IMG/VR virus record: IMGVR_UViG_3300031957_002643
Coordinates: 1 to 64,000 of that record
DNA length: 64,000 nt
Direction: 5' to 3' (one strand)
The translations under genes were made by a program, and so were the position numbers. Under the pieces are notes generated by a model, which had not been told where the DNA came from, made no database searches, and was given only the letters and a program-made list of their open reading frames with translations. Each line of letters opens with the position of its first letter. The stretch's first letter is position 1. This document shows, in pieces, positions 7,701 through 43,504 of this stretch.

Positions 7701-7946
7701 ATGACAGAAGATTTAAAACAAACACGAAAGAATTTGAAGAGCTTGATTGATGTCGCTTATGATATCGAGATCACTTCATCAGACATCGGACTATACGAAT
7801 CCAGTTTCACTATTGACCATTATCGTCAGTCTTTTGATGGTGATGGCAGAATGACCTACGTCTATAAGAAACCCGTTCAATACAGATTGATCGTGGAGAG
7901 CGAAGGTGAAGAAGTCCTGTTCAAAGACATGACCGCTAAAGAATAA
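7701..7946 (+). CDS. hypothetical protein
   Basis: AAGGA RBS; 81 aa. Confidence 0.6.
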   Translation: MTEDLKQTRKNLKSLIDVAYDIEITSSDIGLYESSFTIDHYRQSFDGDGRMTYVYKKPVQYRLIVESEGEEVLFKDMTAKE

Positions 7947-8748
7947 ACAGTTGTCCCTTGGATTCGTTCCATAGTTTATTGCATTGTCTAGAAAACTGTT
8001 GGCCGGATTGTTCAAATAACTTTTTCATTTCTGGTAAATTTTCTCTGATTAATGGTCGATCCCGATATGCGTCAGGGTACAGGAATTTGATCCTTCCATA
8101 TCTCAAAAAGTGAACGAACATTTCCATGATGATTTCACCTTCACGACTAATGTTGTTGTTTTTGAATGAGGTGATATCTACGAAAGGCTGAACGTGAAGA
8201 AGCATATCAAACATAGCTTGGAATAATTGTTGTTTTTCCATCTTGTGCTCAGTCCCCCAATATCCAACATTGATCCCTTGTATGATATGAATCAGAGGAG
8301 CATAAAAGCTTGTCAGGGTAACGGCTTGCGGCATCATTACTGCGTGCACACATCTATGCATAACCATCCATGGTGATAATGGTATCCATTGACTTGCAGT
8401 ATTATTGGTTAGAATGATGTTAATCGCATCTGGGTTCATTACGGATTGAATTTCATCAGCAACGTCTTCCATACCTTCATCACGCATCACTCTTCCGACT
8501 GTGCTATAAATGAAATGCTCTGGCTTCGTGTACTCGTCACGGACATCAAAGGGCAGACTTAGAAAGACGATATTGAGGTCTTTGTGAAATCTTGGAAACA
8601 GGCGTATCATTTTTGCTTTTAATGCTGTATCCTGTACCACTTGTTTGTCCTTGTAGGTCCAAACAGTGTTGTCAAAACCATCTTTTCTAGGCTTGGCATC
8701 CCAATCGCCTTTGATGTGCATGTCTTCGAAAACGTTAAGTAGTTTCAT
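7936..8748 (-). CDS. putative virion-internal protein (MKLLNVFE N-terminus)
   Basis: Lone minus-strand gene with TAAATA at 8770-8775 and a capsid-targeting-like N-terminus. Confidence 0.6.
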   Translation of the reverse strand: MKLLNVFEDMHIKGDWDAKPRKDGFDNTVWTYKDKQVVQDTALKAKMIRLFPRFHKDLNIVFLSLPFDVRDEYTKPEHFIYSTVGRVMRDEGMEDVADEIQSVMNPDAINIILTNNTASQWIPLSPWMVMHRCVHAVMMPQAVTLTSFYAPLIHIIQGINVGYWGTEHKMEKQQLFQAMFDMLLHVQPFVDITSFKNNNISREGEIIMEMFVHFLRYGRIKFLYPDAYRDRPLIRENLPEMKKLFEQSGQQFSRQCNKLWNESKGQLFIL

Positions 8749-22577: not shown

Positions 22578-22585
22578 AACGTCCT

Positions 22586-26223: not shown

Positions 26224-26228
26224 TACTA

Positions 26229-30166: not shown

Positions 30167-30515
30167 AGATATGATTAAAGACAACCACATCCGATCAATT
30201 AATGATGATGAAGTCAAATTCTTTACCAATCATTTTCGATCTATTTTGGTCAATCACTTGAGCAATAACGAGAGTTCATTTTTGCTTTTTAAGTTGAAAA
30301 TAATTTTATGCACAATTTCCCATTTCGGAGAAATTGAACCACTAATGTCATGCACACGTGGTGAGGACAAGCCTAATTCGATACGGATAATAGTGACGGG
30401 TGAAACGTTTAATAGCGGCATTCATCTAGACATTACTGATGTATGTGATAAGAATAAGCTGATGGAAGAACTGGTTGAATTTTCTAAAGGCAAATTCAAA
30501 GAGTATTACTCATGA
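30159..30515 (+). CDS. E18-family paralog 22
   Basis: MLRDMIKDNHIRSINDDE. Confidence 0.7.
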   Translation: MLRDMIKDNHIRSINDDEVKFFTNHFRSILVNHLSNNESSFLLFKLKIILCTISHFGEIEPLMSCTRGEDKPNSIRIIVTGETFNSGIHLDITDVCDKNKLMEELVEFSKGKFKEYYS

Positions 30516-30874
30516 TCACTAATTTGCTATACTATGATGCTCTTAGTAACGTATATCACGATGAAAGAGCTTTCGTTCTTTGGAATATTGCGGAAATCAT
30601 AACCAAACACAAAGGTAAACTTGCCGCACAGATGTTCATTAACACTTATTTGTATGGTCGATATGCTACTAGACAACTTATGACACACGACGAAATCAGT
30701 TTGTGTTTTGTATGGCCAAATATTCACAAAGATTACATTATTGCAATCATTCATTGTGAGGTTTATCGTACTCGTATTGAAATCGGTACCGAATATATGT
30801 CTAATCCTGACGACTTTATTGTAGACCTTTGGGAATTCCAACGCAATGAATTCAACAAGAGATATAATAAATGA
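30512..30874 (+). CDS. E18-family paralog 23
   Basis: MITNLLYYDALSNVYHDE. Confidence 0.7.
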   Translation: MITNLLYYDALSNVYHDERAFVLWNIAEIITKHKGKLAAQMFINTYLYGRYATRQLMTHDEISLCFVWPNIHKDYIIAIIHCEVYRTRIEIGTEYMSNPDDFIVDLWEFQRNEFNKRYNK

Positions 30875-31242
30875 TCATCCAAAAAATCATACTTAATCAT
30901 GTAGAAGATGTCGGGAAGAAGGAGATGAGATTTATCGCTGATTGGTTTGGTCACATGATTGAAGAACATACGCAGAAATCAGTAAAAACGAGTGATAGTA
31001 TTTTCAAAGAAATCGAAAGATATAACCGTAGTTGGTACGATCTTAAGAGAACTCCAAAAATAAAGATCGAAGAAAGTCTTTTGAATACGTATGCTATTAT
31101 GATTAGTATTCATAGTCCATACTTTGTCTCAAGTTTTTACATAACTTTGGATATGTTTGGTGATTGTGATTACGATGCGTTCATGGATGAGGTGAACCGG
31201 TTCGCTGCAATCGACTATAAGGATTATCATGATGCTTTGTGA
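30871..31242 (+). CDS. E18-family paralog 24
   Basis: MIIQKIILNHVEDVGKKE. Confidence 0.7.
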   Translation: MIIQKIILNHVEDVGKKEMRFIADWFGHMIEEHTQKSVKTSDSIFKEIERYNRSWYDLKRTPKIKIEESLLNTYAIMISIHSPYFVSSFYITLDMFGDCDYDAFMDEVNRFAAIDYKDYHDAL

Positions 31243-31597
31243 TTTGGTGAGACGAGAACACATCGTATCTTTGGCATATGATGAAGCAGCACATATGGCC
31301 AGAAAGTTGGTGCTCATAGACAACAAGTATAAGACACGTAAAGATTTGACGTTTGATGATGTCATGGAATCCATGGAGGGGTGGGATAGTTTGTGTTTCG
31401 ATTCCTACGTCATACCAGAAATAACTATTATTAAAGTAGGCGGAACAAGTATTAATGTCAGATACAGAGGCAATCTGATTCGAGGAGATATATTCGTCAA
31501 CTCCTGTCTTCTTGGGTATTCCAAGTATAAGGAATTGATGTGGGAGCTTATTGCGTTTTCAGGTGATGCATTCACGGATTATCACAATGCTTCGTAA
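31232..31597 (+). CDS. E18-family paralog 25
   Basis: MLCDLVRREHIVSLAYDE (second ATG of tandem MM). Confidence 0.7.
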   Translation: MLCDLVRREHIVSLAYDEAAHMARKLVLIDNKYKTRKDLTFDDVMESMEGWDSLCFDSYVIPEITIIKVGGTSINVRYRGNLIRGDIFVNSCLLGYSKYKELMWELIAFSGDAFTDYHNAS

Positions 31598-31955
31598 CGT
31601 CATCGCAAATCAGTATATTCGCACTATGGTAATGGACGAAGTACGTTTTGTGTCAGAACATATATGTGAATTAGTGAACAAAGTGTTATCTAATCACAAA
31701 TATAATTTGGATGTGAATTTCACAGTAGACACCTTTTTAGATCAAGGCCATATTGGTATATTTGGTCTGAACCCTAATTTGACTATATCGCAGTCTGCAC
31801 GACAACAACTATACATCAAATTGAGCGGTCCCGTTTTTATTTCTGAGGTCAAATGGAACCTTGGTGTTCTCACCGAGAATGAGTTCAATAAGACTATCAG
31901 AAAGCTCAATATATTTGCCGCGAATGAATTCAGATATTATCACAATGCTTCGTAA
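31587..31955 (+). CDS. E18-family paralog 26
   Basis: MLRNVIANQYIRTMVMDE. Confidence 0.7.
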   Translation: MLRNVIANQYIRTMVMDEVRFVSEHICELVNKVLSNHKYNLDVNFTVDTFLDQGHIGIFGLNPNLTISQSARQQLYIKLSGPVFISEVKWNLGVLTENEFNKTIRKLNIFAANEFRYYHNAS

Positions 31956-32316
31956 TGTCATCATACATGAATACGCCAAGCATATGGCACAGAGAGAATT
32001 AATATTCGTATTCACAATCATTGCCCAAATCATGGACAAGTATTTTTATGACCCTATGGACAGGGTAGACGTGGAATTCGCTGTAACGAAAATGATGGAC
32101 AAGGGCAGTTTCGGCCTTCGTGACATCCAACCACGGTTGAGTATTATACATCGCAAGACTGACAAATTCATTATCGGAATAGATAGTCCATTCATACAGT
32201 CGCACACTAATTTTTGGTGCCCTAGTCTAACCATAGAAGAAGCGAACAGTATGAATGAAGAATTGCAAACCTTCGCTGATAATGAGTTCCTAGATTACCA
32301 CGGACTTGTATCTTGA
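31945..32316 (+). CDS. E18-family paralog 27
   Basis: MLRNVIIHEYAKHMAQRE. Confidence 0.7.
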   Translation: MLRNVIIHEYAKHMAQRELIFVFTIIAQIMDKYFYDPMDRVDVEFAVTKMMDKGSFGLRDIQPRLSIIHRKTDKFIIGIDSPFIQSHTNFWCPSLTIEEANSMNEELQTFADNEFLDYHGLVS

Positions 32317-32333
32317 GATATGCCTTCCGGTCA

Positions 32334-32339
32334 TAAATA
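32334..32339 (+). promoter_or_regulatory. putative late promoter (TAAATA), 5 nt before ATG
   Basis: CATAAATAtcgggATG at the boundary between two arrays. Confidence 0.65.
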
Positions 32340-32344
32340 TCGGG

Positions 32345-33067
32345 ATGGTCCACTCTCTACGCAAATACTTGATTGAAAACGAACACCAACAAGGAACATA
32401 CGAATCCTATGTGGCGTATTTCGAGAACTTGGACTACACCAAGAAATCCACCATTGAAAAACTAAAACTTCCATTCCCACCTGCCAACCAAAGAGAAACT
32501 ATGTTTAACAAAGATGGGTATGAAATGGATGGAGGGTATGAAATTTTTGATAATAGTATCATCAGGAAGCCATACATCACCATGAAGATTATTCCAAAGG
32601 ACAAAATCCGATATGGCATAATGCTTGAATTCAATATCAAAACTCACAAATTGGACCAGTGTATTCTTCTTAATCCAAAACGTTCATATGCAACACAAAC
32701 AAATATTAAAGATTGCGCGGTTCAATACCATGCTGGCAATTTTTACTTCAACAGTAATGGTCAACTGGTTCCTAATATTGGATATCACATTTTACAAACA
32801 CTGGTCAGGGACTACCAGCGAAAAACATTTTATAGTGTGCTGAAGAACCGAGAAGACCATATCAACAATAATATTCTTCCTATGATTCAAGGTTTGATCG
32901 ACAATGAGTATTTGTCATTGAAACAGGCCAAGTATTATATGAATGAGATTGCCGAAGAATCTGCAACATATTGGAAACACCAAGACCCATCTCATGGTGA
33001 AACGTTTGAAGAAGCGATTGAAGACTTCCGTAGATTGATGAGGGAGGCTACTCGTGCGCTTACGTAG
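32345..33067 (+). CDS. putative virion-internal protein (MVHSLRKYLIE)
   Basis: Start adjusted; paralog of the next two ORFs (GTYE.Y..YF..LD...KS...L.LPFPPAN). Confidence 0.7.
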   Translation: MVHSLRKYLIENEHQQGTYESYVAYFENLDYTKKSTIEKLKLPFPPANQRETMFNKDGYEMDGGYEIFDNSIIRKPYITMKIIPKDKIRYGIMLEFNIKTHKLDQCILLNPKRSYATQTNIKDCAVQYHAGNFYFNSNGQLVPNIGYHILQTLVRDYQRKTFYSVLKNREDHINNNILPMIQGLIDNEYLSLKQAKYYMNEIAEESATYWKHQDPSHGETFEEAIEDFRRLMREATRALT

Positions 33068-33743
33068 CATTGTGGAGGGTGAGGCACCCGAAGGCACTCT
33101 TGAAGCCTACACGGCGTATTTTAACGGGTTGGACCTCCGTAAGAAATCCGTGTTGGATAATATCAGATTACCGTTCCCACCAGCTAATGAAAGTGAAGCC
33201 ACTTATCGGCTTCACGGTCGATTGGGACCATTTTATGAAGTTGATGATTCAACTTATCGATTGCGGCTTAATCTCGAATACCAAGACATGGATCGCATCT
33301 ATATGGAGTTTTATGAGGACAGTGATCATCCTTATATTTTCAAATTCAAAGAAAAGGTGGATGGTACTGCGAAAGAAGTTCGTTGGTTCGAGAATGGTGA
33401 ACGCCAATATCGTTTCAAATCAACGAGACATATGGAGCACAGCGTTATCAACCACTTAGAACATATGCTTGATTATTGGATTGAGATTAGTCCCAATAAT
33501 GGAGGCATTGAATATGTGATGAAGGGGCAAGCATTTTTGGTGAAGTATGCATCGGAACTCATGTCTCTCAAGGAAAATGAATTTATAGATAGTCGTACTG
33601 CTAGTAGATGCATTGAAGCTGCTATCGATAAAGTAGAAGACGCATTGAATAGATTAGTGAATGATGATGTACTTGAGAAGAATGCTCGTCATGTGAAGGA
33701 ACTCAAAGCAACGTATGAGAAGGTGCGTCATGCGGTTGCGTAA
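33054..33743 (+). CDS. putative virion-internal protein (MRLRSIVE)
   Basis: GGAGG RBS; paralog family. Confidence 0.7.
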   Translation: MRLRSIVEGEAPEGTLEAYTAYFNGLDLRKKSVLDNIRLPFPPANESEATYRLHGRLGPFYEVDDSTYRLRLNLEYQDMDRIYMEFYEDSDHPYIFKFKEKVDGTAKEVRWFENGERQYRFKSTRHMEHSVINHLEHMLDYWIEISPNNGGIEYVMKGQAFLVKYASELMSLKENEFIDSRTASRCIEAAIDKVEDALNRLVNDDVLEKNARHVKELKATYEKVRHAVA

Positions 33744-34527
33744 TATTGTAGAAGCTGAGCAGAAGCGTGGTTCCTTTGAAGACTTTTATGAGTACTTCAC
33801 CAGTATGGATTTGACACATAAATCTGTGCTGGAAAGTCTTCGTCTTCCCTTTTCTACCGCCAACGATAGTGAGATCATCTATAAACAAGATGGCACACGA
33901 ACCGATAGTTACTTCCACTATGGAAATATTATACGTTTTGTATACAGGAAACTCACATCTCCTCATTATGATCAAATTTTAATGGAGTTCGAATTAGACG
34001 GCAGTCTTAGAAAAATCGATTTCAGAAAACATGATTCTCATGGTTATACGTCATATCGGGCAGGTGATATAATGGCTGTGATGTTCGATACACGTGACGG
34101 GCGGCCTATGGTTACTATAAAAAATACAACAGGTAATTCCTCAGATGATTACTTTATGAATGAAATTCGTACTAAGGGCATTGATGATTTTGTTAGCTAC
34201 GTTTATCCCAGCTTCAGAGAAACCGAAAACAATTATGCAGACACACCAGTATGGTTAGAAAGATCACAGGAATTCTTGAGCCGATTACTGGATGCCGGGT
34301 ATATCACAAAAGAAGATGCAATTAATGCGATTGATCAGATTCGTGCGAAGGTTGATCAAATAGAAGACCTATTCATTAATAAAATAGGTCTTGATGATTT
34401 TGGTATCTATTCAACTAATAGTGGAAAGTATCAAAAGGAAATTGAAGACGATCCGGTAGCTCATTTTAACAGGCTCAAAGCTGAAATCGACGCCAAGTTC
34501 AAGGAGGTGTATGATGCGTTTGTCTAA
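33730..34527 (+). CDS. putative virion-internal protein (MRLRNIVE)
   Basis: Start adjusted; paralog family. Confidence 0.7.
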   Translation: MRLRNIVEAEQKRGSFEDFYEYFTSMDLTHKSVLESLRLPFSTANDSEIIYKQDGTRTDSYFHYGNIIRFVYRKLTSPHYDQILMEFELDGSLRKIDFRKHDSHGYTSYRAGDIMAVMFDTRDGRPMVTIKNTTGNSSDDYFMNEIRTKGIDDFVSYVYPSFRETENNYADTPVWLERSQEFLSRLLDAGYITKEDAINAIDQIRAKVDQIEDLFINKIGLDDFGIYSTNSGKYQKEIEDDPVAHFNRLKAEIDAKFKEVYDAFV

Positions 34528-35239
34528 TATCATTGAAGCAACAGGACTTACCTTTGAACAACTTGTTGACGTGTTCCGCAATGCGAATATCAAAACGGTT
34601 GAAGACATCCAAAAATTCAGGTTGAAGAAAAGCATGATCCCAAATCAGAGTGTTTACCTCTTTGATAAAAATGGACGAAATAAAGGTGAGTATGCCGCTC
34701 GTACTTTTAACTTTTATGTAGGTGATGAGGAGGCCGAGAACAATATTCTTGAAGTCTACACGAATGCGGAAGAAGGGTTCAATAAATTTGATTACGATTT
34801 GATCACTGATCGGTTACTTCGTGCTGCTAGGTTTAAGCCCTATACGACAGAGCTTGGAGATATCGTTATTGGTTCGGATCATAAAACTATTACAGATCAG
34901 CCTGTAAGCGTTGATTGGTTCCATGGTGAAATGAGATGTCATTGGCCACTAATAGGTACAAACGGACATGACAGAACCATACCATTTGTGTCCTTTGTCA
35001 GACACAATTTTAATACAATTTATGAAAAGAATGATGATTGGGAACAGGCATTCGATTATGTCACCAATGCCTGTAAGAACAATAAAGAATGGGGATTCAT
35101 TGACGGGGATAGGGCTAAAGCTGTTGTTGAAGTCGTAACGGAAATGATGATCAGATATATGAGACAGACAAACGTGGACAGGAAGATCATTGGTGGTGCT
35201 GAACGCAAGAGACAGGAGATGATCGATGAAATCTCTTAA
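34514..35239 (+). CDS. putative virion-internal protein (MRLSNIIE)
   Basis: AGGAGG RBS; LFDKNGR.KG shared with the next two ORFs. Confidence 0.7.
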   Translation: MRLSNIIEATGLTFEQLVDVFRNANIKTVEDIQKFRLKKSMIPNQSVYLFDKNGRNKGEYAARTFNFYVGDEEAENNILEVYTNAEEGFNKFDYDLITDRLLRAARFKPYTTELGDIVIGSDHKTITDQPVSVDWFHGEMRCHWPLIGTNGHDRTIPFVSFVRHNFNTIYEKNDDWEQAFDYVTNACKNNKEWGFIDGDRAKAVVEVVTEMMIRYMRQTNVDRKIIGGAERKRQEMIDEIS

Positions 35240-35924
35240 GACATATCTTGTGGAGACAGAACAAGTGGATGATTTGATGAGTTTCTTCAAAGAAAAGAAG
35301 ATATCTGATCTGAATACATTCAAGGAAATCAGGAAAACTCACACATTTAATACGCCCAATCAGGTATTGCTTTTTGACAGAGATGGTGAGCCTAAAGGTA
35401 ATCAAATCGTTGCTAGGAATTACAATGAATGGAGCGGTCCATATACTTTTGCGGTCTTCATTAATGATCCTTCTCTATCTTACAATACCTTCGAGATCAC
35501 TAATGGGAAACTATTCTCTATGGGTAGAGAATTCATGACCGAGGACGGTTATATTGGAAGACGGTATCATGACAAGGATTACTTGCCGCTCAAAGTAAGT
35601 ATTAACACAAAGTATGATAGCGAGAAAACCATTTGGTTTTTTGATCGCACAGAGATCACAAGGTTTGGAGAATTTATTCAAAAAATTCTATACCATGAAA
35701 TGAAGCATGTATTGAATGATCATGAGAAAGCCTTTGAAGCCGTTAAGAAAGCTGTGACTGTAAATGTCGAAGGCGGCTTTGTGAGTAGAAGTCTTGCAGC
35801 GAGAGTATTGAAGGTGGTGTTGAAAACCCGTTTCCTAAATCGTATTCTTTCAACTGACATGAACCGGGAGAAGATCAAACCTATCATACAAAAGGTGGAG
35901 GACTTGATCAATGAAATCTCTTAA
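35226..35924 (+). CDS. putative virion-internal protein (MKSLKTYLVE)
   Basis: LLFDRDGEPKGNQ. Confidence 0.7.
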   Translation: MKSLKTYLVETEQVDDLMSFFKEKKISDLNTFKEIRKTHTFNTPNQVLLFDRDGEPKGNQIVARNYNEWSGPYTFAVFINDPSLSYNTFEITNGKLFSMGREFMTEDGYIGRRYHDKDYLPLKVSINTKYDSEKTIWFFDRTEITRFGEFIQKILYHEMKHVLNDHEKAFEAVKKAVTVNVEGGFVSRSLAARVLKVVLKTRFLNRILSTDMNREKIKPIIQKVEDLINEIS

Positions 35925-36690
35925 CACTTACCTGTTTGAAGAAACAAAGGTGACTGATCCATTTGAGTTTTTCAAGACTGTGGAAATTAATACATTGGAT
36001 GATTATCTCAAACTTAGAGACAATTACAGATTTGAAGTATCCAATTTCGTTCTCTTGTTTGACAAGAATGGACGCAAGAAGGGTGATCAAGTCATGGAAC
36101 ATAGAAGAGTTAATAAATGGATTCACATCTATCTTGATAACAAGAAGGGTTTCAACAATTTCTACATCAATTTGGATGGAATACTGATTAGGGCTGAGAT
36201 GTCACAAATGGAAGCATCTGATAGAATGACTACGTTCAGAATGACGCCCAATAGATATCTTCCATCATCGATCAATGTGTTTGCTTCAACGGGTGATCCT
36301 GCTGGTTTGACATGCTCATGGGAGACTCGTTCTGTAATCAATCCATTGGATAAATCATTTACCATTTTCAGTAAGTTTGCGAGTTATTATCTTCTATCGG
36401 AACAAACCACAAAATTGGAACAATCGACGGGCGGAATAAAGACATTGGATTTGTTTCTCGAAAGTCTTGAAACGCTTAAAGAGATGGTTGCAGCGAATGT
36501 GGATGCTGGTTTCATTGACTATCTCGATGCGATGGAAGCAGTTAGAGATTTCTCCGATAAGGCGATTGAGAAGACTTCAAGACATGCTATCACTTACGAA
36601 CCAGAGTATAGAGACGAATACAGAGAAATAATCGGCGGTATGGCACGTGCTAGGGACGAATTATTTGCACAATATGAAAGGAATAGGTGA
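35911..36690 (+). CDS. putative virion-internal protein (MKSLNTYLFE)
   Basis: LLFDKNGRKKGDQ. Confidence 0.7.
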   Translation: MKSLNTYLFEETKVTDPFEFFKTVEINTLDDYLKLRDNYRFEVSNFVLLFDKNGRKKGDQVMEHRRVNKWIHIYLDNKKGFNNFYINLDGILIRAEMSQMEASDRMTTFRMTPNRYLPSSINVFASTGDPAGLTCSWETRSVINPLDKSFTIFSKFASYYLLSEQTTKLEQSTGGIKTLDLFLESLETLKEMVAANVDAGFIDYLDAMEAVRDFSDKAIEKTSRHAITYEPEYRDEYREIIGGMARARDELFAQYERNR

Positions 36691-37445
36691 TGGACTTTAT
36701 TGATCAGGCTTATGCTGAATTTAGAAAGCATGATTTCAATGATTTGGAAATCATCAAAAATTATCGTTTCCCATTGAAGATGCCAGAAACGGCATTTAGC
36801 GCGTATCGTTATAGAGATAGTGACGATACAGACATCAAGGCTATCAAATTTTTTGGCACAGCAAAAAACGGACAAACTGGTGCTTTCTTTGTGTTTCCAG
36901 AAGAAAGGGACACGATAGCCGCACAACCAAATGCGTTTGGTGTTTCAATCAATGATGGTAAGCTGTATCGTGTATGTTGGGGTGCAAAATTTGGTCGATA
37001 TGAGCCTGACATCTCTAAAGTAGTATCAGAGAGATATTCTGGACCAGCAGAGATATGGATACAGGCCGATAACGACAAACTCAGTTACAAATGGCGTGTT
37101 GGAACCTATTCGGAAAGTATGAATCCTCCTCGACCATACAGAATGGCGGAACAGATGATTATTCATGAGGTGATACATGAATTTTCAACGGGTGATACGT
37201 GGCGTGCATTTGCGAATGTATCCAACCATTTTCTGACTGTAGAAGCAAAGATCATATTCATGTTTGAAAACTCTTATATTGATATCGATCTTAGAAATGA
37301 ACTTGTCAAAAGTGCATTTAATTGTTCGCTTGAATTATTGAACAATATGGCCGACAAAAAAGACAGTGAGGATCGAAAAAGAGCAGACGAGTACATTAAT
37401 AATTTTATCCGCAAGATCGGACCAATTTTGAAGAAATATAAATAG
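36687..37445 (+). CDS. paralog of the same family lacking the N-terminal tag
   Basis: Shares PN...I..G....V.W, GPA and NSYID segments with neighbours. Confidence 0.65.
   Translation: MMDFIDQAYAEFRKHDFNDLEIIKNYRFPLKMPETAFSAYRYRDSDDTDIKAIKFFGTAKNGQTGAFFVFPEERDTIAAQPNAFGVSINDGKLYRVCWGAKFGRYEPDISKVVSERYSGPAEIWIQADNDKLSYKWRVGTYSESMNPPRPYRMAEQMIIHEVIHEFSTGDTWRAFANVSNHFLTVEAKIIFMFENSYIDIDLRNELVKSAFNCSLELLNNMADKKDSEDRKRADEYINNFIRKIGPILKKYK
37437..37444 (+). promoter_or_regulatory. T4-type late promoter TATAAATA, 4 nt before ATG
   Basis: Exact T4 late consensus. Confidence 0.7.
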
Positions 37446-37448
37446 AAG

Positions 37449-38267
37449 ATGCGTATTCGTTCAATCATCACCGAAGGCATTGTTGCCGATGCCGAAAAGC
37501 TTTATCATGAGATTGAAAAGCTGGTTGAAACCTTTGAGCCTACAGAAGAATGGTTCAAAGTTGCTAATGCTCGTATAGCGCTTCCAAAGACGGAATTTCT
37601 TACATTTGATAAAAATGATAGAATGTATGGTGGTTTGTTCCATTGGAAACAGCCTCATATGAATGTCTTAGTCTGGTTTAAACCTCAGAAAAACCCAGCC
37701 CATAATACACAACCGCCAAATTATATTTCTATAGGGCTGAAATCTGGAAGAATTCGAGAAGTTGGATGGACACAAGCTCCTATCGTTGATGATACTGATG
37801 ACATAAAATTCCACAAAGTGAATGGTCCAGCGGTATTCGAAACCAACTATATGGGCGATCAGATGCGTGTCAGTGGACTATGGTATGTCAATGGGTATTA
37901 TCATTTGCCACGTGATGTAATGAATGCATTGTTCCAATACGCGAAGCATAATAATCCTTTTGTTGATACTTTAGACCATGATGATCGGCTAGGTATACAT
38001 GATGAATTACCATACCCAAAACAATTTGATCTGACAATGAAATGGGTGAAGGAGTTTGTCGATAATGGATATGGTTCTGGTGAAGAAGCTATAAAGGCGA
38101 TGAATGGTACGATCAAAAGAATTGTCAATGATGAACAGCTAACGCTTGACGTTGTTTTCGGCAACGAGGATTCTGATTCTGATGCGAAGAATTGGGATGC
38201 GGGTGTTCAACGTCTAGAAGCTTGGAAAACTGATGCTGAAGCTCGTGTAAGGGAGGCGTTCGCATGA
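37449..38267 (+). CDS. putative virion-internal protein (MRIRSIITE)
   Basis: HKVNGPA; DNGY...EEA. Confidence 0.7.
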   Translation: MRIRSIITEGIVADAEKLYHEIEKLVETFEPTEEWFKVANARIALPKTEFLTFDKNDRMYGGLFHWKQPHMNVLVWFKPQKNPAHNTQPPNYISIGLKSGRIREVGWTQAPIVDDTDDIKFHKVNGPAVFETNYMGDQMRVSGLWYVNGYYHLPRDVMNALFQYAKHNNPFVDTLDHDDRLGIHDELPYPKQFDLTMKWVKEFVDNGYGSGEEAIKAMNGTIKRIVNDEQLTLDVVFGNEDSDSDAKNWDAGVQRLEAWKTDAEARVREAFA

Positions 38268-38806
38268 GATTGAGGCAGCTCGTTGAAAAGAAGAGAACCT
38301 TCAAGACAGAAGCGTATTATGATGCCGATGGGAAATTTCATCGTTTAGATGGGCCAGCTTATGTGTCCTATTACGACAATGGTCAATTGTATCGAGAGGT
38401 TTGGAGGGAACACGGTAGATATAAAAGAGACGATGGCCCGTGCTTGGTTAACTATAGTGTCAACGGAGTACTAACGGAACAGATATGGAATAGTAACGAT
38501 AAGCCCGACGAGGTTCCCACAAAATATATTGATACTGAAACTGGAGGGATTGTCATGTCTTGGGGACTGATAAATCCCCCCTATGAGTTTTACTCACACA
38601 GACTTGATGGACCGGCTGAAATTGTTTGGGATCAGAAGAAAAACGAAATGAGATGTTTCTGGTATATCGACAATTACATGTACGGATATAGAACCAGCAG
38701 TATTAATGAACCACCGCAACAATTCTTGAAACAGAGAGAACATGAAACGGATGATCCATTCCCTGAAAAGGTAAAAGTCTTGTTACCGAATGGAGAATAT
38801 CTATGA
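38264..38806 (+). CDS. HRxDGPA-repeat protein (MRLRQLVE)
   Basis: HRLDGPA twice, RDDGP. Confidence 0.75.
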   Translation: MRLRQLVEKKRTFKTEAYYDADGKFHRLDGPAYVSYYDNGQLYREVWREHGRYKRDDGPCLVNYSVNGVLTEQIWNSNDKPDEVPTKYIDTETGGIVMSWGLINPPYEFYSHRLDGPAEIVWDQKKNEMRCFWYIDNYMYGYRTSSINEPPQQFLKQREHETDDPFPEKVKVLLPNGEYL

Positions 38807-39414
38807 GGTTAAATCAGATCGTTGAATCCAAGAAGAAAAAATTCACGCAAACCGAGATGTACTATGACAAAAACGGCAAAATGCACCGGTTGGATGGTCC
38901 TGCTTATAGCGGGTACAGGTCACACCAGAAATTGGCTAGAGAAGAGTGGTTAATTCATGGAAAACACCATTCTAAAGAACACCCATCTCTTATTTTGTAT
39001 TATCCTAAAGGCACGCCTAATATGGAGGCATGGGATTGGTTTGGTAAAGGGCACCGGTTAGATGGTCCTGCTGTAACATATTATAATCCTGATGGTACCG
39101 TGTCGAAAACCGTATGGTTAAAGGATGGGCAAACTCATAGAGATGAGGATTTACCAGCAGTATACGATTACGAGAATCGAGATTATCAGTGGTATAAAAA
39201 TGAAAATCCGCACCGAGACAATGGTCCTGCTGGTGTTAGAAGGGTGAATGGTCGTTGGTATTATGAGTGGGTATTTCATGGAAATAATTTTGGCGAAACT
39301 GAAGACCCAAATAATCCACCCGGTGCATATTTGGATTATCGAAAAACTTATAACAAAGAACCATTCCCAAAAGAGGTTTGGATCAAGATTGAAGGTGAGC
39401 CAGATTTCTCATGA
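38803..39414 (+). CDS. HRxDGPA-repeat protein (MRLNQIVE)
   Basis: About five repeats (HRLDGPA, HRDEDLPA, HRDNGPA). Confidence 0.75.
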   Translation: MRLNQIVESKKKKFTQTEMYYDKNGKMHRLDGPAYSGYRSHQKLAREEWLIHGKHHSKEHPSLILYYPKGTPNMEAWDWFGKGHRLDGPAVTYYNPDGTVSKTVWLKDGQTHRDEDLPAVYDYENRDYQWYKNENPHRDNGPAGVRRVNGRWYYEWVFHGNNFGETEDPNNPPGAYLDYRKTYNKEPFPKEVWIKIEGEPDFS

Positions 39415-39812
39415 TTATTGAACGCATTCAGTATTGTGACAAAGATGGGCATGTGTCTCGTTTGGATGGCCCTGCTGCAATTGAATATTCTGGCGGTAAA
39501 AAAGATTCATTTTTTACCGCATGGTATTATTCTGGTCTTTATATTCGTAGACAAGATAATGACTATGCAGAAATGATGCCTGCAAAATTTGTTCAGTATT
39601 TGCATTATCACATGTACAATCATGTCCCCCAAGGGGAAGTTGTCAAAGTATTCACGGACATTATCAAGAAGATTTACAAAGGTGGATACTTGAGTAAGAA
39701 AGACGCAGTTAAATACATTAGAGAATACAAAATTGCAGATGAGACCAATGACTTGCCAAATCCAAGATGGGTTGGACAGGATTTAGGTATTATGGATGAC
39801 GAGATGTACTGA
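39411..39812 (+). CDS. single HRxDGPA-like repeat plus helical domain
   Basis: SRLDGPA; GGYLSKKDA. Confidence 0.65.
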   Translation: MIIERIQYCDKDGHVSRLDGPAAIEYSGGKKDSFFTAWYYSGLYIRRQDNDYAEMMPAKFVQYLHYHMYNHVPQGEVVKVFTDIIKKIYKGGYLSKKDAVKYIREYKIADETNDLPNPRWVGQDLGIMDDEMY

Positions 39813-41476
39813 TGAAGCTGAGACAAATTGTTGAAGATACAGGATTAAAGAACTATCGAGAGGATTACTATAAAGTATCATCCGATGGACCAGATGTTCT
39901 TCATCGCGACGATGGACCGGCACATGCTATCTACAAAAACGGTAAACCAGTTCTTGAGCACTGGTATCAAAATGGATCAACACATCGTGACAGCGACAGT
40001 CCTGCTTGCACGCATATCAATAATGATAAGAAAACAGAAATATGGTACAAAGATAACGTCAAACATAGAGAAGGTGCACCTGCTCAAATTGAAACCAGAT
40101 TGAATGATATTGGTTATGACATTGAGAAATGGTTCTTTATGGGTGTTGCCCATCGTGATACCAAGGATGGACCACAAGAAACATGGAAAAATTCTGTTGG
40201 TACAGTTTACAAGCAAATATGGTTGGATAAAGATAAGGGACATCATCGTGAAGATGGACCATCATTTATCATGTATCAGCCGAATGGACAGGTCGCCAAA
40301 GAAGAATGGAAAATCAATAATAAACTCCATCGTGATTCCGAGGATGGTCCCGCGTATATCGACAATATGAACAATGACATACGGTACTATTGGAAGGGAA
40401 AGATACACAGACTGGATGGACCTGCATGGGTCGTTGATGGATCATCCGAATGGGCCGTTAACGGCGAGACGATTTGTCTGTCCGATGATCTGAATTTGCC
40501 AGAAAAGTATAGAGAAGCATTTGAAACTGCGGTTGCCGAATACAAAAAGAATAATCCTATCACTGAGGCTAAGGTTATTCGAGATGGTCAGATCACATAT
40601 TACGATCATGTTTCCAGACGTGATCTCCAAAGGCTGATTACTGATAATGAAGAGATCAGAAAATATGGTATGCGTGGCGTGTACTCAGATAGTTTATCTG
40701 TAGCGTCATCCTTAAGAGCACATCATGTGAACTTGGTAAATAATACGGGCAATAACGGTTCATTGATTATTATCGGTGCCAATCGAAAACAATTGGACCA
40801 TATGGACCACAACAATAAGTTCATTTTCTTGTTACCAGATTTAGATAACTGGTTGTTGGAATTCGTTGAACCAAGGGTTTATGATCACTATTCGTTGGTT
40901 CGAATGTTGAATGATATGACTAAAATATTTGGCACCATGAAGCTGATCAAGGCGAATAGAAGAATGCCCGGCTTTCAAGTGTTTGATGAGATCGAGGTTG
41001 GACAAGTATTTGCACCATTGACCGAAGCTAAAGTGATCAAGGATGATGCTAGTTTTGGGTATTCTCAAGGCAAGCAGATTTACACCAAGCTTGCTCGCAG
41101 AGATGCAACCATGCTTTTGGAGAAATACAAGAGAGATGGCATTCGCTTCATCATCACAGAAGATGAAATGTATTATGGACCGCCTGCTTTGTTTTACCAT
41201 TATTCAATAGCAAGTCTTGCTGGTTATGACATTTATGAAGATCGAATGGATTGCGCTGTTGTTGCTCGTAGTGCTGCACAAATTTATAGCATGGAGATGA
41301 CATTCAGAAAATCTGATCCAGTCTTGGTGCTTGAGGATCATCCCGGTTGGTTCATCATGTTGAGGGGCCAGCCATTGCTGTATAAATTCCCATTGGAAGC
41401 AACGATTGCACGCTTGCAGCCTGTATGGGGCAAGATAAGTATTCAAGAAGCAGCGTTGTATTTCGATGAGAATTAA
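39812..41476 (+). CDS. HRxDGPA-repeat protein fused to two repeated domains; putative polyprotein (MKLRQIVE)
   Basis: About seven repeats; internal PITEAKVI and PLTEAKVI junctions. Confidence 0.75.
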   Translation: MKLRQIVEDTGLKNYREDYYKVSSDGPDVLHRDDGPAHAIYKNGKPVLEHWYQNGSTHRDSDSPACTHINNDKKTEIWYKDNVKHREGAPAQIETRLNDIGYDIEKWFFMGVAHRDTKDGPQETWKNSVGTVYKQIWLDKDKGHHREDGPSFIMYQPNGQVAKEEWKINNKLHRDSEDGPAYIDNMNNDIRYYWKGKIHRLDGPAWVVDGSSEWAVNGETICLSDDLNLPEKYREAFETAVAEYKKNNPITEAKVIRDGQITYYDHVSRRDLQRLITDNEEIRKYGMRGVYSDSLSVASSLRAHHVNLVNNTGNNGSLIIIGANRKQLDHMDHNNKFIFLLPDLDNWLLEFVEPRVYDHYSLVRMLNDMTKIFGTMKLIKANRRMPGFQVFDEIEVGQVFAPLTEAKVIKDDASFGYSQGKQIYTKLARRDATMLLEKYKRDGIRFIITEDEMYYGPPALFYHYSIASLAGYDIYEDRMDCAVVARSAAQIYSMEMTFRKSDPVLVLEDHPGWFIMLRGQPLLYKFPLEATIARLQPVWGKISIQEAALYFDEN

Positions 41477-41963
41477 AGACCTATTGCCTGAAACTGGAAT
41501 TATGTCGGAGTCAAAAAGACTTCCGGGTAAGAATCCGTTGAACAGCATCTATTATGATATCAGGAAAGCAGAGGTTTCCAGATTATTGGAAATCAACGAA
41601 CATGATGGGCTTCGCGGTTACTATGATCGTGAATATCATGAGATGTTCGTAAGCAGTTCCAGATCACATCACCATGCCGATATTTTTGACATTGCTGGAA
41701 GGCATGGAATGATTCAGTGTCATGATGGTTTTGAATTCTGCATTGCCAAAAGTCTTCTACAGTTGAACCATATGGAATGGGATTTGCCTGAACGTGAGGG
41801 TACAGCTTATATGCTTGCTGATCATCACCCGTGGTTCATTGTAACCCATTTCTCTCATCAAATGAAAACGGCCATGACCAAATTTGAAAAGACGTTTGGC
41901 AAGTTGGTTGAGATTACCCGTGACAATAGAGATCAGGTATTGTTTGAATCTATATGTGAATGA
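41466..41963 (+). CDS. stand-alone paralog of the polyprotein C-terminal domains
   Basis: R......L......G[MIL]R, [VS]SS...HH pattern; MRIKDLLPE N-terminus. Confidence 0.65.
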   Translation: MRIKDLLPETGIMSESKRLPGKNPLNSIYYDIRKAEVSRLLEINEHDGLRGYYDREYHEMFVSSSRSHHHADIFDIAGRHGMIQCHDGFEFCIAKSLLQLNHMEWDLPEREGTAYMLADHHPWFIVTHFSHQMKTAMTKFEKTFGKLVEITRDNRDQVLFESICE

Positions 41964-41983
41964 CTTGTAAACATTAATAAAGT

Positions 41984-42484
41984 GTGGTAAATATATTGAA
42001 GTTGTTGAAATTATTTGAGGGTGATATGGATCATGCTGCGCATATGGCGAAAACTGGTTATTGGGGCAAACAAGGGGCCGGACTGGTATTCTTTTGCACT
42101 CGGACTAAAAGATTTTGCTTATCTTTTCGGTCGTCCTTAGTCGCTGAGCCTCATACGTGGTCCACATGGGGTGGTGCTATGGATGAGGGCGAGGAACCCG
42201 CAGAAACGGCTGTACGGGAGGCTCACGAGGAAACAGGGTTATCTCTGGACATCAAGAAGCTTACCCGTATTCATGTGAACCAGATTCCAAATGTTTTCAC
42301 CTACACGACATTCGTTGCTCTTGTGAATGAAGAGTTCGAACCGCACACTGAAGGCAATTGGGAAGTTGATGGTTATGAGTGGTGCAAGTTTGGTGATTGG
42401 CCAGAGCCTTTACATAAAGGCATGAAACAAACCCTGACCCATCAACCGGCTTTGGACATTCTTGAGGAACTTAGTCGTAGATGA
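41984..42484 (+). CDS. Nudix hydrolase with capsid-targeting-like N-terminus (start uncertain, possibly TTG 41996 or 42002)
   Basis: Nudix box GGAMDEGEEPAETAVREAHEETGL; KLLKLFE; TAAATA at 41988-41993. Confidence 0.88.
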   Translation: MVNILKLLKLFEGDMDHAAHMAKTGYWGKQGAGLVFFCTRTKRFCLSFRSSLVAEPHTWSTWGGAMDEGEEPAETAVREAHEETGLSLDIKKLTRIHVNQIPNVFTYTTFVALVNEEFEPHTEGNWEVDGYEWCKFGDWPEPLHKGMKQTLTHQPALDILEELSRR

Positions 42485-42653
42485 CTTCTACGTTCGTCAT
42501 TGGAAGAATTTCTTCTACGATGATCTGAGCATCTTCCAGTTCCAAAGTGCCTTCTTCGATATGATCCATCCAGTAATCAACGTCTGAAAGCTTTTCATCG
42601 AGAAATTGTTCAATTTCTTCGGTGAGGATTTTCTTAAGTTCTGATAATGACAA
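42471..42653 (-). CDS. hypothetical protein
   Basis: GGGAG RBS; acidic. Confidence 0.55.
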   Translation of the reverse strand: MSLSELKKILTEEIEQFLDEKLSDVDYWMDHIEEGTLELEDAQIIVEEILPMTNVEVIYD

Positions 42654-42685
42654 TTCTTAAACTCCCGATTTAGAATCGAGGTTAT

Positions 42686-43504
42686 TTAGATGTACTTTCG
42701 CATTTTTGAGATAAGGGATGCAAATTCATTACCACCAATGACTCGTTCCATTCTATTGCAAATCTCATGCATCTTTATATTGCCACGAGTACCATGGTGA
42801 ACTTCTGACAAGTATAACTCAATGAAGGCAGTCAAGAATGCGGCTTCGTCATCGTTCACCACGACATTAAAATTATCAGAAAGGAAGTGTCTGAGATATG
42901 AACCAACGCGGTTGCGTCCATTTCTTGTATGCGATCTTACTTGTTGAGTGAAATATTCTTTTTTCAAGTCAAAAGTTTCGTATACCCGATTGTTCATCCA
43001 CTTGCACAAATCACGAGTAGGCTCGATACCATTCGTGCCTGATGTGATCAATTTCACTTCACCACGTGACAACCCGCCTTTTTCAATATATTTCTGGAAG
43101 ATCGAATCTGAATGATCGCCAGTCAGACTCGCGGTCATCATTTTATCTATATTCTTTCTGGCGGTATCAGTAATTTGTTCAGCTAGATTGTCGTCGAGAT
43201 GGAAGAAGGAATGAGTCTTACCATCGGTGCGTCTCACGGGCATTTCGCGTCCCGGTTCCCACCAGCCCGTTTCCTTTTCCTGCGCACTCATGTATCGATC
43301 TTCATCATAACGACCGATTTCAACTGCATCACAGGAATAGCACACATAAGGTGCAACTTGCTGACCCTTGCCATTGAAAAGGGCTTCAGCTTCTTCCTTA
43401 CAATACGGACAGTGAACAACCTTATTTGTTGAAGGTGCATCCGTATCCGTTTCGGCTTCTTGTTGGTCCCAAAACGGATCATCCATGGAAAGTGCATTAT
43501 TCAT
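42686..43504 (-). CDS. hypothetical protein with N-terminal zinc ribbon
   Basis: CPYC...CYSC. Confidence 0.65.
   Translation of the reverse strand: MNNALSMDDPFWDQQEAETDTDAPSTNKVVHCPYCKEEAEALFNGKGQQVAPYVCYSCDAVEIGRYDEDRYMSAQEKETGWWEPGREMPVRRTDGKTHSFFHLDDNLAEQITDTARKNIDKMMTASLTGDHSDSIFQKYIEKGGLSRGEVKLITSGTNGIEPTRDLCKWMNNRVYETFDLKKEYFTQQVRSHTRNGRNRVGSYLRHFLSDNFNVVVNDDEAAFLTAFIELYLSEVHHGTRGNIKMHEICNRMERVIGGNEFASLISKMRKYI

What the first reader, a model, noticed from the sequence alone, without database searches (positions are those of the whole stretch)
39812..41963. Probable phage polyprotein: three domains joined by duplicated P[IL]TE/AKVI cleavage-like sites
Seen: in the 554-aa ORF an HRxDGPA-repeat domain is followed by NPITE-AKVIRD (E252, nt ~40565) and APLTE-AKVIKD (E405, nt ~41024). 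The two ~150-aa units resemble each other (RRD...L......G[MI]R) and the free-standing downstream ORF 41466 (IMSE-SKRL...HDGLRG...SSRSHHH). Known: gp21-type proteases cut after [IL]xE. Inference: one targeting leader packages three cargo proteins that are released during head maturation.
Basis: partly seen in the sequence, partly recalled or inferred. Interest (0 to 1): 0.7.

Follow-up and report, generated by a model that had tools for sequence, protein, structure and literature searches.

The report
Three-part phage cargo polyprotein candidate
A giant marine phage has fused three small genes, which related phages keep separate, into one protein whose joints keep the short signal cut by T4-type head proteases, so one address tag probably loads three proteins into the virus head; this rests on sequence comparison, not experiment.

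Summary
ORF 39812-41476 (554 aa) has seven HRxDGP repeats, then two homologous ~150-aa units, each preceded by P[IL]TE-AKVI[RK]D. ORF 41466-41963 is a third, free-standing unit.

The window is the start of a 335.5-kb marine jumbo phage with a T4-type head module, including a gp21-type protease (Peptidase_S77).

Three results matter most.
- In related metagenomic phages the units are separate genes of 142-161 aa. They begin with an 8-aa leader, M-K-[IL]-x-x-L-[FY]-E, followed by [AS]K.I. The internal PITE/PLTE sites align with the end of that leader.
- One relative has the repeat gene and two units as three separate, leader-bearing genes in the same order.
- The leader, ending in [LI]xE, sits on about 20 unrelated proteins here. 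Half of the genes with the late-promoter-like arrangement ATAAATA-N5-ATG encode it.

[LI]TE[AS]K occurs three times in the proteome: at the two joints and in the scaffold protein. A confident AlphaFold model puts the site in a coil before strand 1.

Best reading: a gene fusion that kept the processing half of a T4-CTS-like leader, so one leader packages three cargoes that the protease separates. Cleavage and packaging are inferred, not shown. The cargo fold has no known relative.

The parts
39812..41476 (+). 554-aa ORF (P0001): leader + HRxDGP-repeat module + unit 1 + unit 2
   Evidence: identical in two seawater runs
39812..39835 (+). 8-aa N-terminal leader MKLRQIVE, ending in I-V-E
   Evidence: The same leader type is on about 20 unrelated ORFs: 12 of 466 N-termini match the pattern, against 0.46 after shuffling. 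It is conserved at the amino-acid level with synonymous codons.
39836..40567 (+). HRxDGP (MORN-like) repeat module, aa 9-252, 28.3 kDa if released
   Evidence: Seven repeats. Database homologues align only to aa 30-231. Paralogues are ORFs 38264, 38803 and 39411.
40556..40567 (+). Joint 1: P-I-T-E (aa 249-252); predicted cut between nt 40567 and 40568
   Evidence: It aligns with the last residues of the leader of free-standing homologues (alignment A2). It lies in a coil before strand 1 in the model.
40568..41026 (+). Unit 1 (aa 253-405, type A, 17.8 kDa)
   Evidence: 40% identical to the free-standing P0128, E 4e-25. AlphaFold2 model has pLDDT 89.4 and pTM 0.85.
41015..41026 (+). Joint 2: P-L-T-E (aa 402-405); predicted cut between nt 41026 and 41027
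   Evidence: the same pentapeptide class occurs elsewhere only in the scaffold
41027..41473 (+). Unit 2 (aa 406-554, type C, 17.2 kDa)
   Evidence: Nearest relatives are the two units of the fused P0125 and P0126.
41466..41963 (+). Free-standing unit (P0002, type B). It has its own leader MRIKDLLPE (41466-41492) and a second site-like I-M-S-E (41499-41510) before SKRL.
   Evidence: best relatives are P0126 and P0131, which are free-standing in relatives
37438..37444 (+). ATAAATA late-promoter-like motif, 4 nt before the ATG of ORF 37449. That ORF heads the overlapping gene string 37449-41963.
37449..39812 (+). Four upstream genes of the same string: 37449 (MRIRSIITE), 38264 (MRLRQLVE), 38803 (MRLNQIVE), 39411 (MIIE..). 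The last three are HRxDGP-repeat paralogues.
32345..36690 (+). Six leader-bearing genes of about 230-260 aa, in two paralogue groups, starting at 32345, 33054, 33730, 34514, 35226 and 35911. The first is preceded by ATAAATA-N5-ATG.
41984..42484 (+). NUDIX hydrolase. From the TTG at 41996 it starts M-K-L-L-K-L-F-E|GD. Its orthologue in relative L020 starts MRLIDLLE|GD.
   Evidence: the start codon is uncertain
7936..8748 (-). Another leader-bearing gene in the window (MKLLNVFE)

Best explanation
The 554-aa ORF is a lineage-specific fusion of three formerly separate, neighbouring late genes: an HRxDGP-repeat protein and two copies of an orphan ~150-aa alpha/beta domain.

In this phage clade such proteins carry an 8-aa N-terminal leader, M-[KR]-[LI]-x-x-[LI]-x-E. 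It works like the T4 capsid targeting sequence. It brings the protein into the prohead core, and the gp21-type protease then cuts it off after the Glu.

When the genes fused, the internal copies lost the front (targeting) half of the leader. They kept the back (processing) half: P-[IL]-T-E, followed by A-K-V-I, the start of strand 1.

The result is that one leader takes the whole 64-kDa precursor into the prohead. During maturation the protease cuts after E8, E252 and E405. This releases three cargo proteins of about 28, 18 and 17 kDa in equal numbers. They are presumably ejected with the DNA.

Shown:
- the fusion;
- the homology of the joints to the leader ends;
- the leader on unrelated proteins;
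- the protease gene;
- the link between the leader and the late-promoter-like motif.

Inferred:
- targeting;
- cleavage;
- ejection;
- what the cargo does.
For: **Homologues in relatives**
- An exhaustive HMMER search with the three units found free-standing homologues of 142-161 aa. They begin MKIIDLFE-SKVL, MKIEHLYE-AKRI, MKIIDLYE-SSII, MKLEALFE-AKRI and MKMSDLYE-SKKI.
- It also found an independent two-unit fusion, P0125: MRLNSLME-SKVI ... LVHE-AKTI.
- In alignment A2 the internal KKNNPITE and QVFAPLTE occupy the leader columns, and the Glu is nearly invariant.

**Synteny**
- Relatives share the layout: array, unit(s), NUDIX, a 60-aa gene, GMP reductase.
- L021 has a small repeat gene (MRLCDLFE), P0128 and P0126 as three separate genes in the order of the three parts of P0001.
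- L020 has one free unit. L009/L010 have a free type-A unit and a two-unit fusion.
- Unit 1 is 40% identical to the free-standing P0128.

**The leader is a modular signal**
- It sits on unrelated families.
- 12 of 466 N-termini match the pattern, against 0.46 after shuffling.
- It is conserved as amino acids, not as nucleotides.

**Protease and its known substrates**
- The genome encodes Peptidase_S77, 83 bits, within portal / acidic core protein / protease / scaffold / major capsid protein (MCP) in T4 order.
- The scaffold has 5 [LIV][TS]E[AS] sites in 360 aa, against 0.34 per 1000 aa genome-wide. One of them is ALTE-SK.
- The MCP has L-M-E about 10 residues before the conserved NIA motif, where T4 gp23 has L-T-E|A.
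- In the T4 record, IPI has ..TITE|A, IPII and IPIII have MKTYQEFIAE|A, gp24 has MAKINELLRE|S, and gp22 has MLKEQLIAE|A.
- gp21 cuts after L/I-x-E. In the T4 CTS, positions 8 and 10 govern processing and positions 4 and 7 govern targeting (PMC9026906).

**Late expression**
- ATAAATA-N5-ATG occurs 18 times. Other spacings occur 0-3 times.
- Of the 16 cases with real ORFs, 8 encode the leader. ORF 37449 has the motif at N4, and it heads the gene string that contains P0001.
- The same motif precedes baseplate genes and giant, probably structural, genes.

**A cultured relative**
- In Vibrio phage 2.275.O, the 80-aa gene between the portal and the acidic core protein starts MKLVELFE|A. That is the position of T4 gp67.

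**Structure**
- The AlphaFold2 model of unit 1 has pLDDT 89.4. Residues 1-9 (KKNNPITEA) are coil with lower confidence, and strand 1 is KVIRD.
Against: - There are no virion, proteome or transcript data. The phage is uncultured, and only DNA runs hold it.
- E-[AS]-K-x-I is conserved in every family member. It could be kept for folding alone.
- What speaks specifically for a cleavage site is mainly the hydrophobic P3 residue (I, L, V) at three internal joints in two fusions, plus the Glu.
- Joint 2 is short. The model has the last residues of unit 1 (VF) in a beta bridge, and strand 1 of unit 2 starts 5-6 residues later. Access for a protease is not assured.
- The predicted products are neutral to acidic (pI 5.6-7.2). 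The T4 internal proteins are described as basic (PMC9026906).
- Some repeat paralogues in relatives lack the leader.
- The array lies beside nucleotide-metabolism genes and about two dozen small paralogues, which looks like an accessory region.
- The protease-substrate co-fold gave no answer.
Confidence: 0.5

Rival explanations
1. P0001 is an uncleaved multidomain protein. It is a gene fusion, but the P[IL]TE-AKVI motif is only the vestigial N-terminal edge of a duplicated domain, kept because it packs against or leads into strand 1. Only the N-terminal leader is removed, or nothing is.
For: - The two sites are copies by descent.
- E-[AS]-K-x-I is conserved family-wide, as a structural element would be.
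- The linker at joint 2 is only about 5 residues between structured parts.
- [IL]xE is common: 9 in P0001 and 11.8 per 1000 aa genome-wide.
Against: - All three internal joints known, in two independent fusions, keep a hydrophobic P3 and Glu P1 but lose the rest of the leader.
- The residues before the Glu are coil with lower confidence, not part of the fold.
- [LI]TE[AS]K is otherwise found only in the scaffold, the protease's main substrate.
Confidence: 0.28
2. The 8-aa leader is not a capsid-targeting or protease signal. It is some other N-terminal tag, for example for stability, localisation or assembly with a non-virion partner. The array encodes intracellular host-takeover proteins. The joints are then not cut by the head protease.
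For: - The array is next to NUDIX and GMP reductase, follows about two dozen small paralogues, and has no structural-gene hits.
- A NUDIX enzyme seems to carry the leader.
- The products are not basic.
Against: - The leader ends in [LI]xE, like every T4 gp21 propeptide read from the T4 record.
- It is tied to the ATAAATA late-type motif that is shared with structural genes.
- It occurs on the gp67-position head gene of Vibrio phage 2.275.O.
- The protease's own N-terminus, MTKTALIE|T, parallels T4 gp21's MNEPQLLIE|T.
Confidence: 0.2
3. The long ORF is an artefact: a mis-assembly, or a sequencing error that removed stop and start codons between three genes.
For: The genome is metagenome-assembled, and relatives have separate genes.
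Against: - Contigs from two runs are identical, with no variants.
- The protein is seen on 4 contigs.
- The joints are in frame and have lost the Met and the front half of the leader. A single error cannot do that.
- A second, independent fusion exists (P0125, on two contigs).
Confidence: 0.02

Closest known systems
T4 internal proteins IPI, IPII, IPIII and Alt, with the capsid targeting sequence (CTS), processed by gp21
   Same: - A short N-terminal leader ends in [LI]-x-E, followed by Ala or Ser.
- The same leader sits on unrelated, fast-evolving cargo proteins.
- A gp21-type protease and a T4-order head module are present.
- T4 IPI is cut at ..ITE|A and gp23 at ..LTE|A. These are the same tetrapeptide types as PITE|A and PLTE|A.
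   Different: - The leader is 8 aa, not 10-19, and has no sequence homology to the IPs.
- There are about 20 carriers instead of 4.
- The products are not basic.
- One precursor carries three cargoes with internal sites. Per PMC9026906, the internal proteins lose N-terminal propeptides and Alt is cut at both ends; that review describes no precursor that yields several folded cargo proteins.
- Nothing has been shown experimentally.
Head ejection and inner-body proteins of phiKZ and SPN3US, cut by a diverged gp21 homologue
   Same: - Jumbo phages with many paralogous head-cargo genes.
- The protease cuts after Glu in a three-residue motif.
- Propeptide regions can hold several cleavage sites (PMC9026906, PMC5694885).
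   Different: - Those phages use S/A/G-x-E or A-x-E.
- Their propeptides are mostly over 100 aa (PMC5694885).
- Here the motif is T4-like [LI]-x-E with an 8-aa leader.
- This phage's head genes are closest to the ~350-kb Asteriusvirus/Eneladusvirus-type phages, not to phiKZ.
T4 scaffold and core proteins gp22, gp67 and gp68, cut at several sites
   Same: Several gp21-type sites lie in one chain. The scaffold of this phage holds the only other [LI]TE[AS]K.
   Different: Those proteins are degraded to peptides that leave the head. Here the sites lie exactly between folded domains, so folded products would remain.
Polyvalent proteins of phages and conjugative elements (my recollection of Iyer et al. 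2017; not read here)
   Same: The idea of several effector domains delivered in one chain and separated by proteolysis. The best viral fold match was a 'PolyVal ADP-ribosyltransferase', but it was not significant (E 0.2, TM 0.40).
   Different: Those are very large proteins with recognisable enzymatic domains, often with their own protease. None of that is detectable here.

Membership tests
Substrates of a T4 gp21-type prohead protease / CTS-bearing head cargo | The genome encodes a gp21-type (Peptidase_S77) protease in a T4-like head module | tested here: met
   PF03420, 83 bits, at G000 74308-74940, between the acidic core protein and the scaffold/MCP
Substrates of a T4 gp21-type prohead protease / CTS-bearing head cargo | A short N-terminal propeptide ending in [LI]-x-E | tested here: met
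   MKLRQIVE on P0001 and MRIKDLLPE on P0002. 12 of 466 N-termini match the pattern, against 0.46 after shuffling.
Substrates of a T4 gp21-type prohead protease / CTS-bearing head cargo | The same leader on otherwise unrelated cargo proteins | tested here: met
   At least four unrelated families in the array, plus dispersed genes; the same holds in relatives L009, L020 and L021
Substrates of a T4 gp21-type prohead protease / CTS-bearing head cargo | Made when proheads assemble (late transcription) | tested here: inconclusive
   ATAAATA-N5-ATG is tied to leader genes and ATAAATA to structural genes. This is a motif inference only; there is no RNA data.
Substrates of a T4 gp21-type prohead protease / CTS-bearing head cargo | Present in virions, with the leader removed after the Glu | not testable with these tools
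   Uncultured phage with no proteome. The protease-substrate co-fold gave no answer.
Polyprotein (one chain cut into several folded products) | The parts are independent folding units that exist as separate proteins elsewhere | tested here: met
   Free-standing homologues P0126-P0131. L021 has the three parts as separate genes. The unit model has pLDDT 89.4.
Polyprotein (one chain cut into several folded products) | Protease sites lie in accessible linkers between the parts | tested here: inconclusive
   The site is in a coil before strand 1, but joint 2 is only about 5 residues long. The full-length model was unusable (pLDDT 30).
Polyprotein (one chain cut into several folded products) | Cleavage products observed | not testable with these tools
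   No proteomic data
MORN-repeat variant (PF07661) / DUF6745-type repeats | A Pfam match of the repeat module | tested here: not met
   No Pfam hit at E <= 0.1. Homologues (E down to 1e-45) align to aa 30-231, and a few of them carry PF07661 or PF20530. It is related in style, but I do not file it as a member.
Known folds for the ~150-aa unit | A structural match to a solved or predicted fold | tested here: not met
   Foldseek against PDB gave best E 0.33. The VIA-align wide search gave best Z 2.9. AFDB clusters and BFVD gave nothing below E 0.2. There was no PDB sequence match.

The most novel reading that the evidence does not exclude
This clade of marine jumbo phages uses a portable 8-aa tag to load a large, fast-changing set of about 20 proteins into the head. 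The set possibly includes a NUDIX hydrolase. Gene fusion that keeps only the cleavage half of the tag is a way to co-package several cargoes in fixed 1:1:1 proportion from one tag. That would be a polyprotein strategy for ejected proteins not described for T4-type heads. The cargo unit would also be a new fold with a conserved G-x-R-G ... H signature and unknown activity.
Probability: 0.4. Interest if true: 0.7.

Novelty: new variant of a known kind. Interest (0 to 1): 0.6.

Why it matters
If correct, three things follow.
- The T4 capsid-targeting and processing logic would extend to an uncultured ~335-kb marine phage lineage.
- A sequence rule (leader plus the ATAAATA-N5-ATG arrangement) would predict the injected-protein set of such phages from the genome alone.
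- It would show how new multi-cargo precursors arise: neighbouring tagged genes fuse, and only the protease site is kept.

Injected proteins are the phage's first-strike tools against host defences. A list of about 20 candidates of unknown fold is therefore a useful target list. A minimal 8-aa tag could also serve for loading foreign proteins into large capsids, as the T4 CTS has.

Tried and rejected
- **Pfam and PHROGs** on P0001, P0002, neighbours, dispersed leader genes and homologues: no informative hits.
- **'phages' collection**, blastn of the region and tblastn of P0001: no match.
- **IMG/VR scan** with the three-unit alignment: no relatives.
- **Word-based searches** of 5.8 billion proteins with the unit alignments: essentially only self hits. 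Only the exhaustive HMMER search found the family. One of its hits, P0129, is a low-complexity repeat protein and was discarded.
- **Single-sequence AlphaFold2** of the full protein: unusable, pLDDT 30.
- **Fold searches** of the good unit model (PDB by Foldseek, PDB wide by VIA-align, AFDB clusters, BFVD) and the ESM Atlas search with the free-standing homologue P0127: nothing significant. I looked for an ADP-ribosyltransferase-like reading (G-x-R-G, a Ser-rich strand). It rests only on a non-significant BFVD hit, so I do not claim it.
- **PDB sequence search** with the profile: nothing.
- **Co-folding** of the protease with P0001 236-420: 'no answer', score 0.01. This is not evidence either way.
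- **Exact T4 late promoter TATAAATA**: only 18 sites, fewer than the roughly 32 expected from base composition. The 7-mer ATAAATA is the informative motif.
- **RNA evidence**: only DNA runs hold the sequence.
- **A second Gp23-family (vertex) gene**, sought in order to inspect its propeptide: none found.
- **Assembly artefact**: rejected.
Full report
**What the window is.** The window is the first 64 kb of a 335,552-bp virus record with direct terminal repeats. The sequence is held by contigs of seawater metagenome runs. The window encodes SbcCD-like, RNA ligase, thymidylate synthase, GMP reductase and NUDIX genes. Just outside it lies a head module in T4 order:
- T4-type portal;
- a very acidic core-like protein;
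- Peptidase_S77, the gp21-type prohead protease, 83 bits;
- a coiled-coil scaffold;
- the Gp23-family major capsid protein (MCP).

The MCP is about 55% identical to those of ~350-470-kb jumbo phages. These include Escherichia phage EJP2 (Asteriusvirus), Yersinia phage fHe-Yen9-04 (Eneladusvirus), Xanthomonas phage XaC1, Vibrio phage 2.275.O and Sinorhizobium phage Phosso. No close cultured relative exists.

**The observation.** ORF 39812-41476 encodes 554 aa.
- It has seven HR-x-DGP-type repeats between aa 31 and 205.
- PITEAKVIRD is at aa 249-258 and PLTEAKVIKD at aa 402-411.
- The two segments that follow are homologous over their whole length (E 7e-5).
- Both are homologous to the next ORF, 41466-41963 (E 1e-6 and 7e-6).
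- Database homologues of the whole protein (327 at E <= 1e-3) cover only the repeat module, aa 30-231. A few of them carry the Pfam families MORN_2 or DUF6745. P0001 itself passes no Pfam or PHROG model.
- Contigs from two runs are identical across 38000-43000.

**What the duplicated motif is.** Word-based searches found nothing for the units. An exhaustive HMMER search of 1.84 billion representatives did find a small family.
- Five are free-standing proteins of 142-161 aa. Each starts with M-K-[ILM]-x-x-L-[FY]-E, followed at once by [AS]-[KS]-x-[IL].
- One is a 293-aa protein made of two units (P0125). It starts MRLNSLME-SKVI and has LVHE-AKTI between the units.
- In the 11-sequence alignment A2, the internal KKNNPITE and QVFAPLTE of P0001 fall in the leader columns, and the Glu is nearly invariant.

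**Are the parts separate genes in relatives? Yes.** The contigs that carry these homologues are syntenic with the window. The shared layout is: array, unit(s), NUDIX, a 60-aa gene on the other strand, then GMP reductase.
- L021 has a small HRxDG-repeat gene (MRLCDLFE..), then P0128, then P0126. These are three separate genes, each with its own leader, in the same order as the three parts of P0001.
- L020, from a 116-kb contig, has several repeat genes. It also has two ~250-aa genes and one unit that all start MKMSDLYE, and a NUDIX gene that starts MRLIDLLE|GD.
- L009/L010 have a free type-A unit, an unrelated 135-aa gene that starts MKVDQLLTE|AGG, and the two-unit fusion next to NUDIX.
- Unit 1 is 40% identical (E 4e-25) to the free-standing P0128. 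P0002 groups with P0126 and P0131. Unit 2 groups with the P0125 units.

The fusion in this phage is thus lineage-specific, and a second fusion arose independently.

**The leader is a modular signal.** In the window the following ORFs start with M-[KR]-[LI]-x-x-[LI]-x-E or a close variant, although they belong to at least four unrelated families:
- 32345, 33054, 33730, 34514, 35226 and 35911;
- 37449, 38264, 38803, 39812 and 41466;
- 8748 on the minus strand;
- perhaps the NUDIX gene, from the TTG at 41996.

Genome-wide, 12 of 466 rough gene N-termini match a pattern for it. Shuffling gives 0.46 on average, and 2 of 2,202 internal Met positions match. Stricter DNA and promoter scans add 144280, 244226 and 259365. 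The leader is conserved as amino acids, with free synonymous variation. It is therefore not an RNA or recombination element.

**Link to the head protease.** gp21 cuts after L/I-x-E. The T4 CTS is 10 residues long, with positions 4 and 7 governing targeting and positions 8 and 10 governing processing. Asp at position 10 blocks processing (PMC9026906).

Read from the T4 record itself:

| T4 protein | Site |
|---|---|
| gp23 | ..SFLTE\|AEIGG |
| IPI | ..TITE\|A |
| IPII, IPIII | MKTYQEFIAE\|A |
| gp24 | MAKINELLRE\|S |
| gp22 | MLKEQLIAE\|A |
| gp21 | MNEPQLLIE\|T |

In this phage:
- The protease starts MTKTALIE|T.
- The MCP has ..TMLME|NASGG about 10 residues before the conserved NIA motif. Vibrio phage 2.275.O has ..KQLME|SATNG at the same place.
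- The scaffold contains ALTE|SKK, RITE|SVA, HVTE|SVS, RLSE|SKT and AVTE|AAA.

[LIV][TS]E[AS] is denser in the scaffold than in any other protein: 5 in 360 aa, against 0.34 per 1000 aa overall. [LI]TE[AS]K occurs only in the scaffold and at the two joints. In Vibrio phage 2.275.O, the 80-aa gene between the portal and the acidic core protein starts MKLVELFE|A. That is the position of gp67 in T4.

**Timing.**
- ATAAATA, the core of the T4 late-promoter consensus (my background knowledge), occurs 70 times. Of these, 37 lie within 60 nt upstream of a same-strand gene start. The genes include baseplate genes and giant genes of 797, 851, 1920, 2957 and 4535 aa.
- The arrangement ATAAATA-N5-ATG, without a Shine-Dalgarno sequence, occurs 18 times. 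Every other spacing from 0 to 11 occurs 0-3 times.
- Of the 16 cases with real ORFs, 8 encode the leader. One of them is ORF 32345, the first of the ~250-aa leader genes.
- ORF 37449 has the motif at N4. It heads an unbroken, overlapping string of genes: 37449, 38264, 38803, 39411, 39812 and 41466.

This supports late co-expression with the head genes, but it is a motif inference.

**Structure.**
- With alignment A2, AlphaFold2 gives a confident alpha/beta model of unit 1 (pLDDT 89.4, pTM 0.85).
- Residues 1-9 (KKNNPITEA) are coil, and the first block has the lower pLDDT of 71. Strand 1 is KVIRD. The site is not buried.
- A caveat applies to joint 2. The C-terminal tail of unit 1 packs back onto the domain, so only about 5 residues are free there.
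- The fold matches nothing known.
- The invariant positions are an Arg in G-x-R-G, a His, and a Gly near the C-terminus.
- The function of the unit is unknown.

**Interpretation.** The best reading (confidence 0.5) is that three neighbouring, leader-tagged late genes fused. The internal leaders were trimmed to their processing half, P-[IL]-T-E. One N-terminal leader would then carry a 64-kDa precursor into the prohead. The gp21-type protease would release products of 28.3, 17.8 and 17.2 kDa.

The rivals are:
- an uncleaved multidomain protein whose motif is only a structural relic (0.28);
- a leader with a function unrelated to the capsid (0.20);
- an assembly artefact (0.02).

**Comparison and novelty.** The system works like the T4 CTS/internal-protein system and like the processed ejection proteins of phiKZ and SPN3US (PMC3012670, PMC9026906, PMC5694885). 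It differs in four ways:
- the leader is 8 aa long;
- about 20 proteins carry it;
- it is tied to an apparently leaderless late-promoter arrangement;
- the precursor has three cargoes, with sites exactly at the domain boundaries.

I rate it a new variant of a known kind. All functional steps remain to be tested.

Noticed in passing
G000 genome-wide; in the window at 32333-32347 and 37438-37451: ATAAATA followed by exactly 5 nt and ATG, with no Shine-Dalgarno sequence, occurs 18 times; every other spacing from 0 to 11 occurs 0-3 times. This suggests T4-like late promoters that give leaderless mRNAs. Half of these genes encode the 8-aa leader.
   Followed up: partly
window 22143-32316 (+): About two dozen back-to-back, often overlapping genes of ~120-130 aa whose products mostly start M-I-x-D-x-I. 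BLAST joins 15 of them into four groups (7, 3, 3, 2); the rest share only size and N-terminus. No function is known, and they do not carry the [LI]xE leader.
   Followed up: partly
window 41984-42484 (+); L020 10483-10974: The NUDIX hydrolase next to the array seems to carry the same leader (MKLLKLFE|GD from the TTG at 41996; MRLIDLLE|GD in relative L020). This raises the possibility of a packaged NUDIX enzyme. In the L010 relative the N-terminus differs. In T4, ipII and ipIII also lie two genes from nudE.
   Followed up: partly
MG592671.1 313256-313498 (L028 2757-2999): In the cultured Vibrio phage 2.275.O, an 80-aa gene (NVP2275O_441) between the portal and the acidic core protein starts MKLVELFE|A. 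It is at the T4 gp67 position and is a testable handle on the leader.
   Followed up: partly
G000 65578-66804 (-), just outside the window (L007 1578-2804): A TnpB / IS605 OrfB-type gene (HTH_OrfB_IS605, OrfB_IS605 and Cas12f1-like TNB domains) lies between the window and the baseplate/portal genes.
   Followed up: no
G000 77355-78953 (-) (L007 13355-14953): A 532-aa TelA (toxic anion resistance) family protein is encoded directly after the major capsid protein gene, on the opposite strand.
   Followed up: no
window 7936-8748 (-) and G000 123857-124741 (-): Two dispersed leader-bearing proteins (MKLLNVFE.., MKIQDLIE..) share an IKGD.WD stretch soon after the leader and look like paralogues. 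Neither has a family hit.
   Followed up: no
window 41466-41510 (+): P0002 has two consecutive site-like elements, MRIKDLLPE|TG and IMSE|SKRL. It looks as if a leader of the repeat-gene type (compare MKLRQIVE|DTG) was placed in front of a unit that still had the end of its own leader. This hints at recombination within the array.
   Followed up: no
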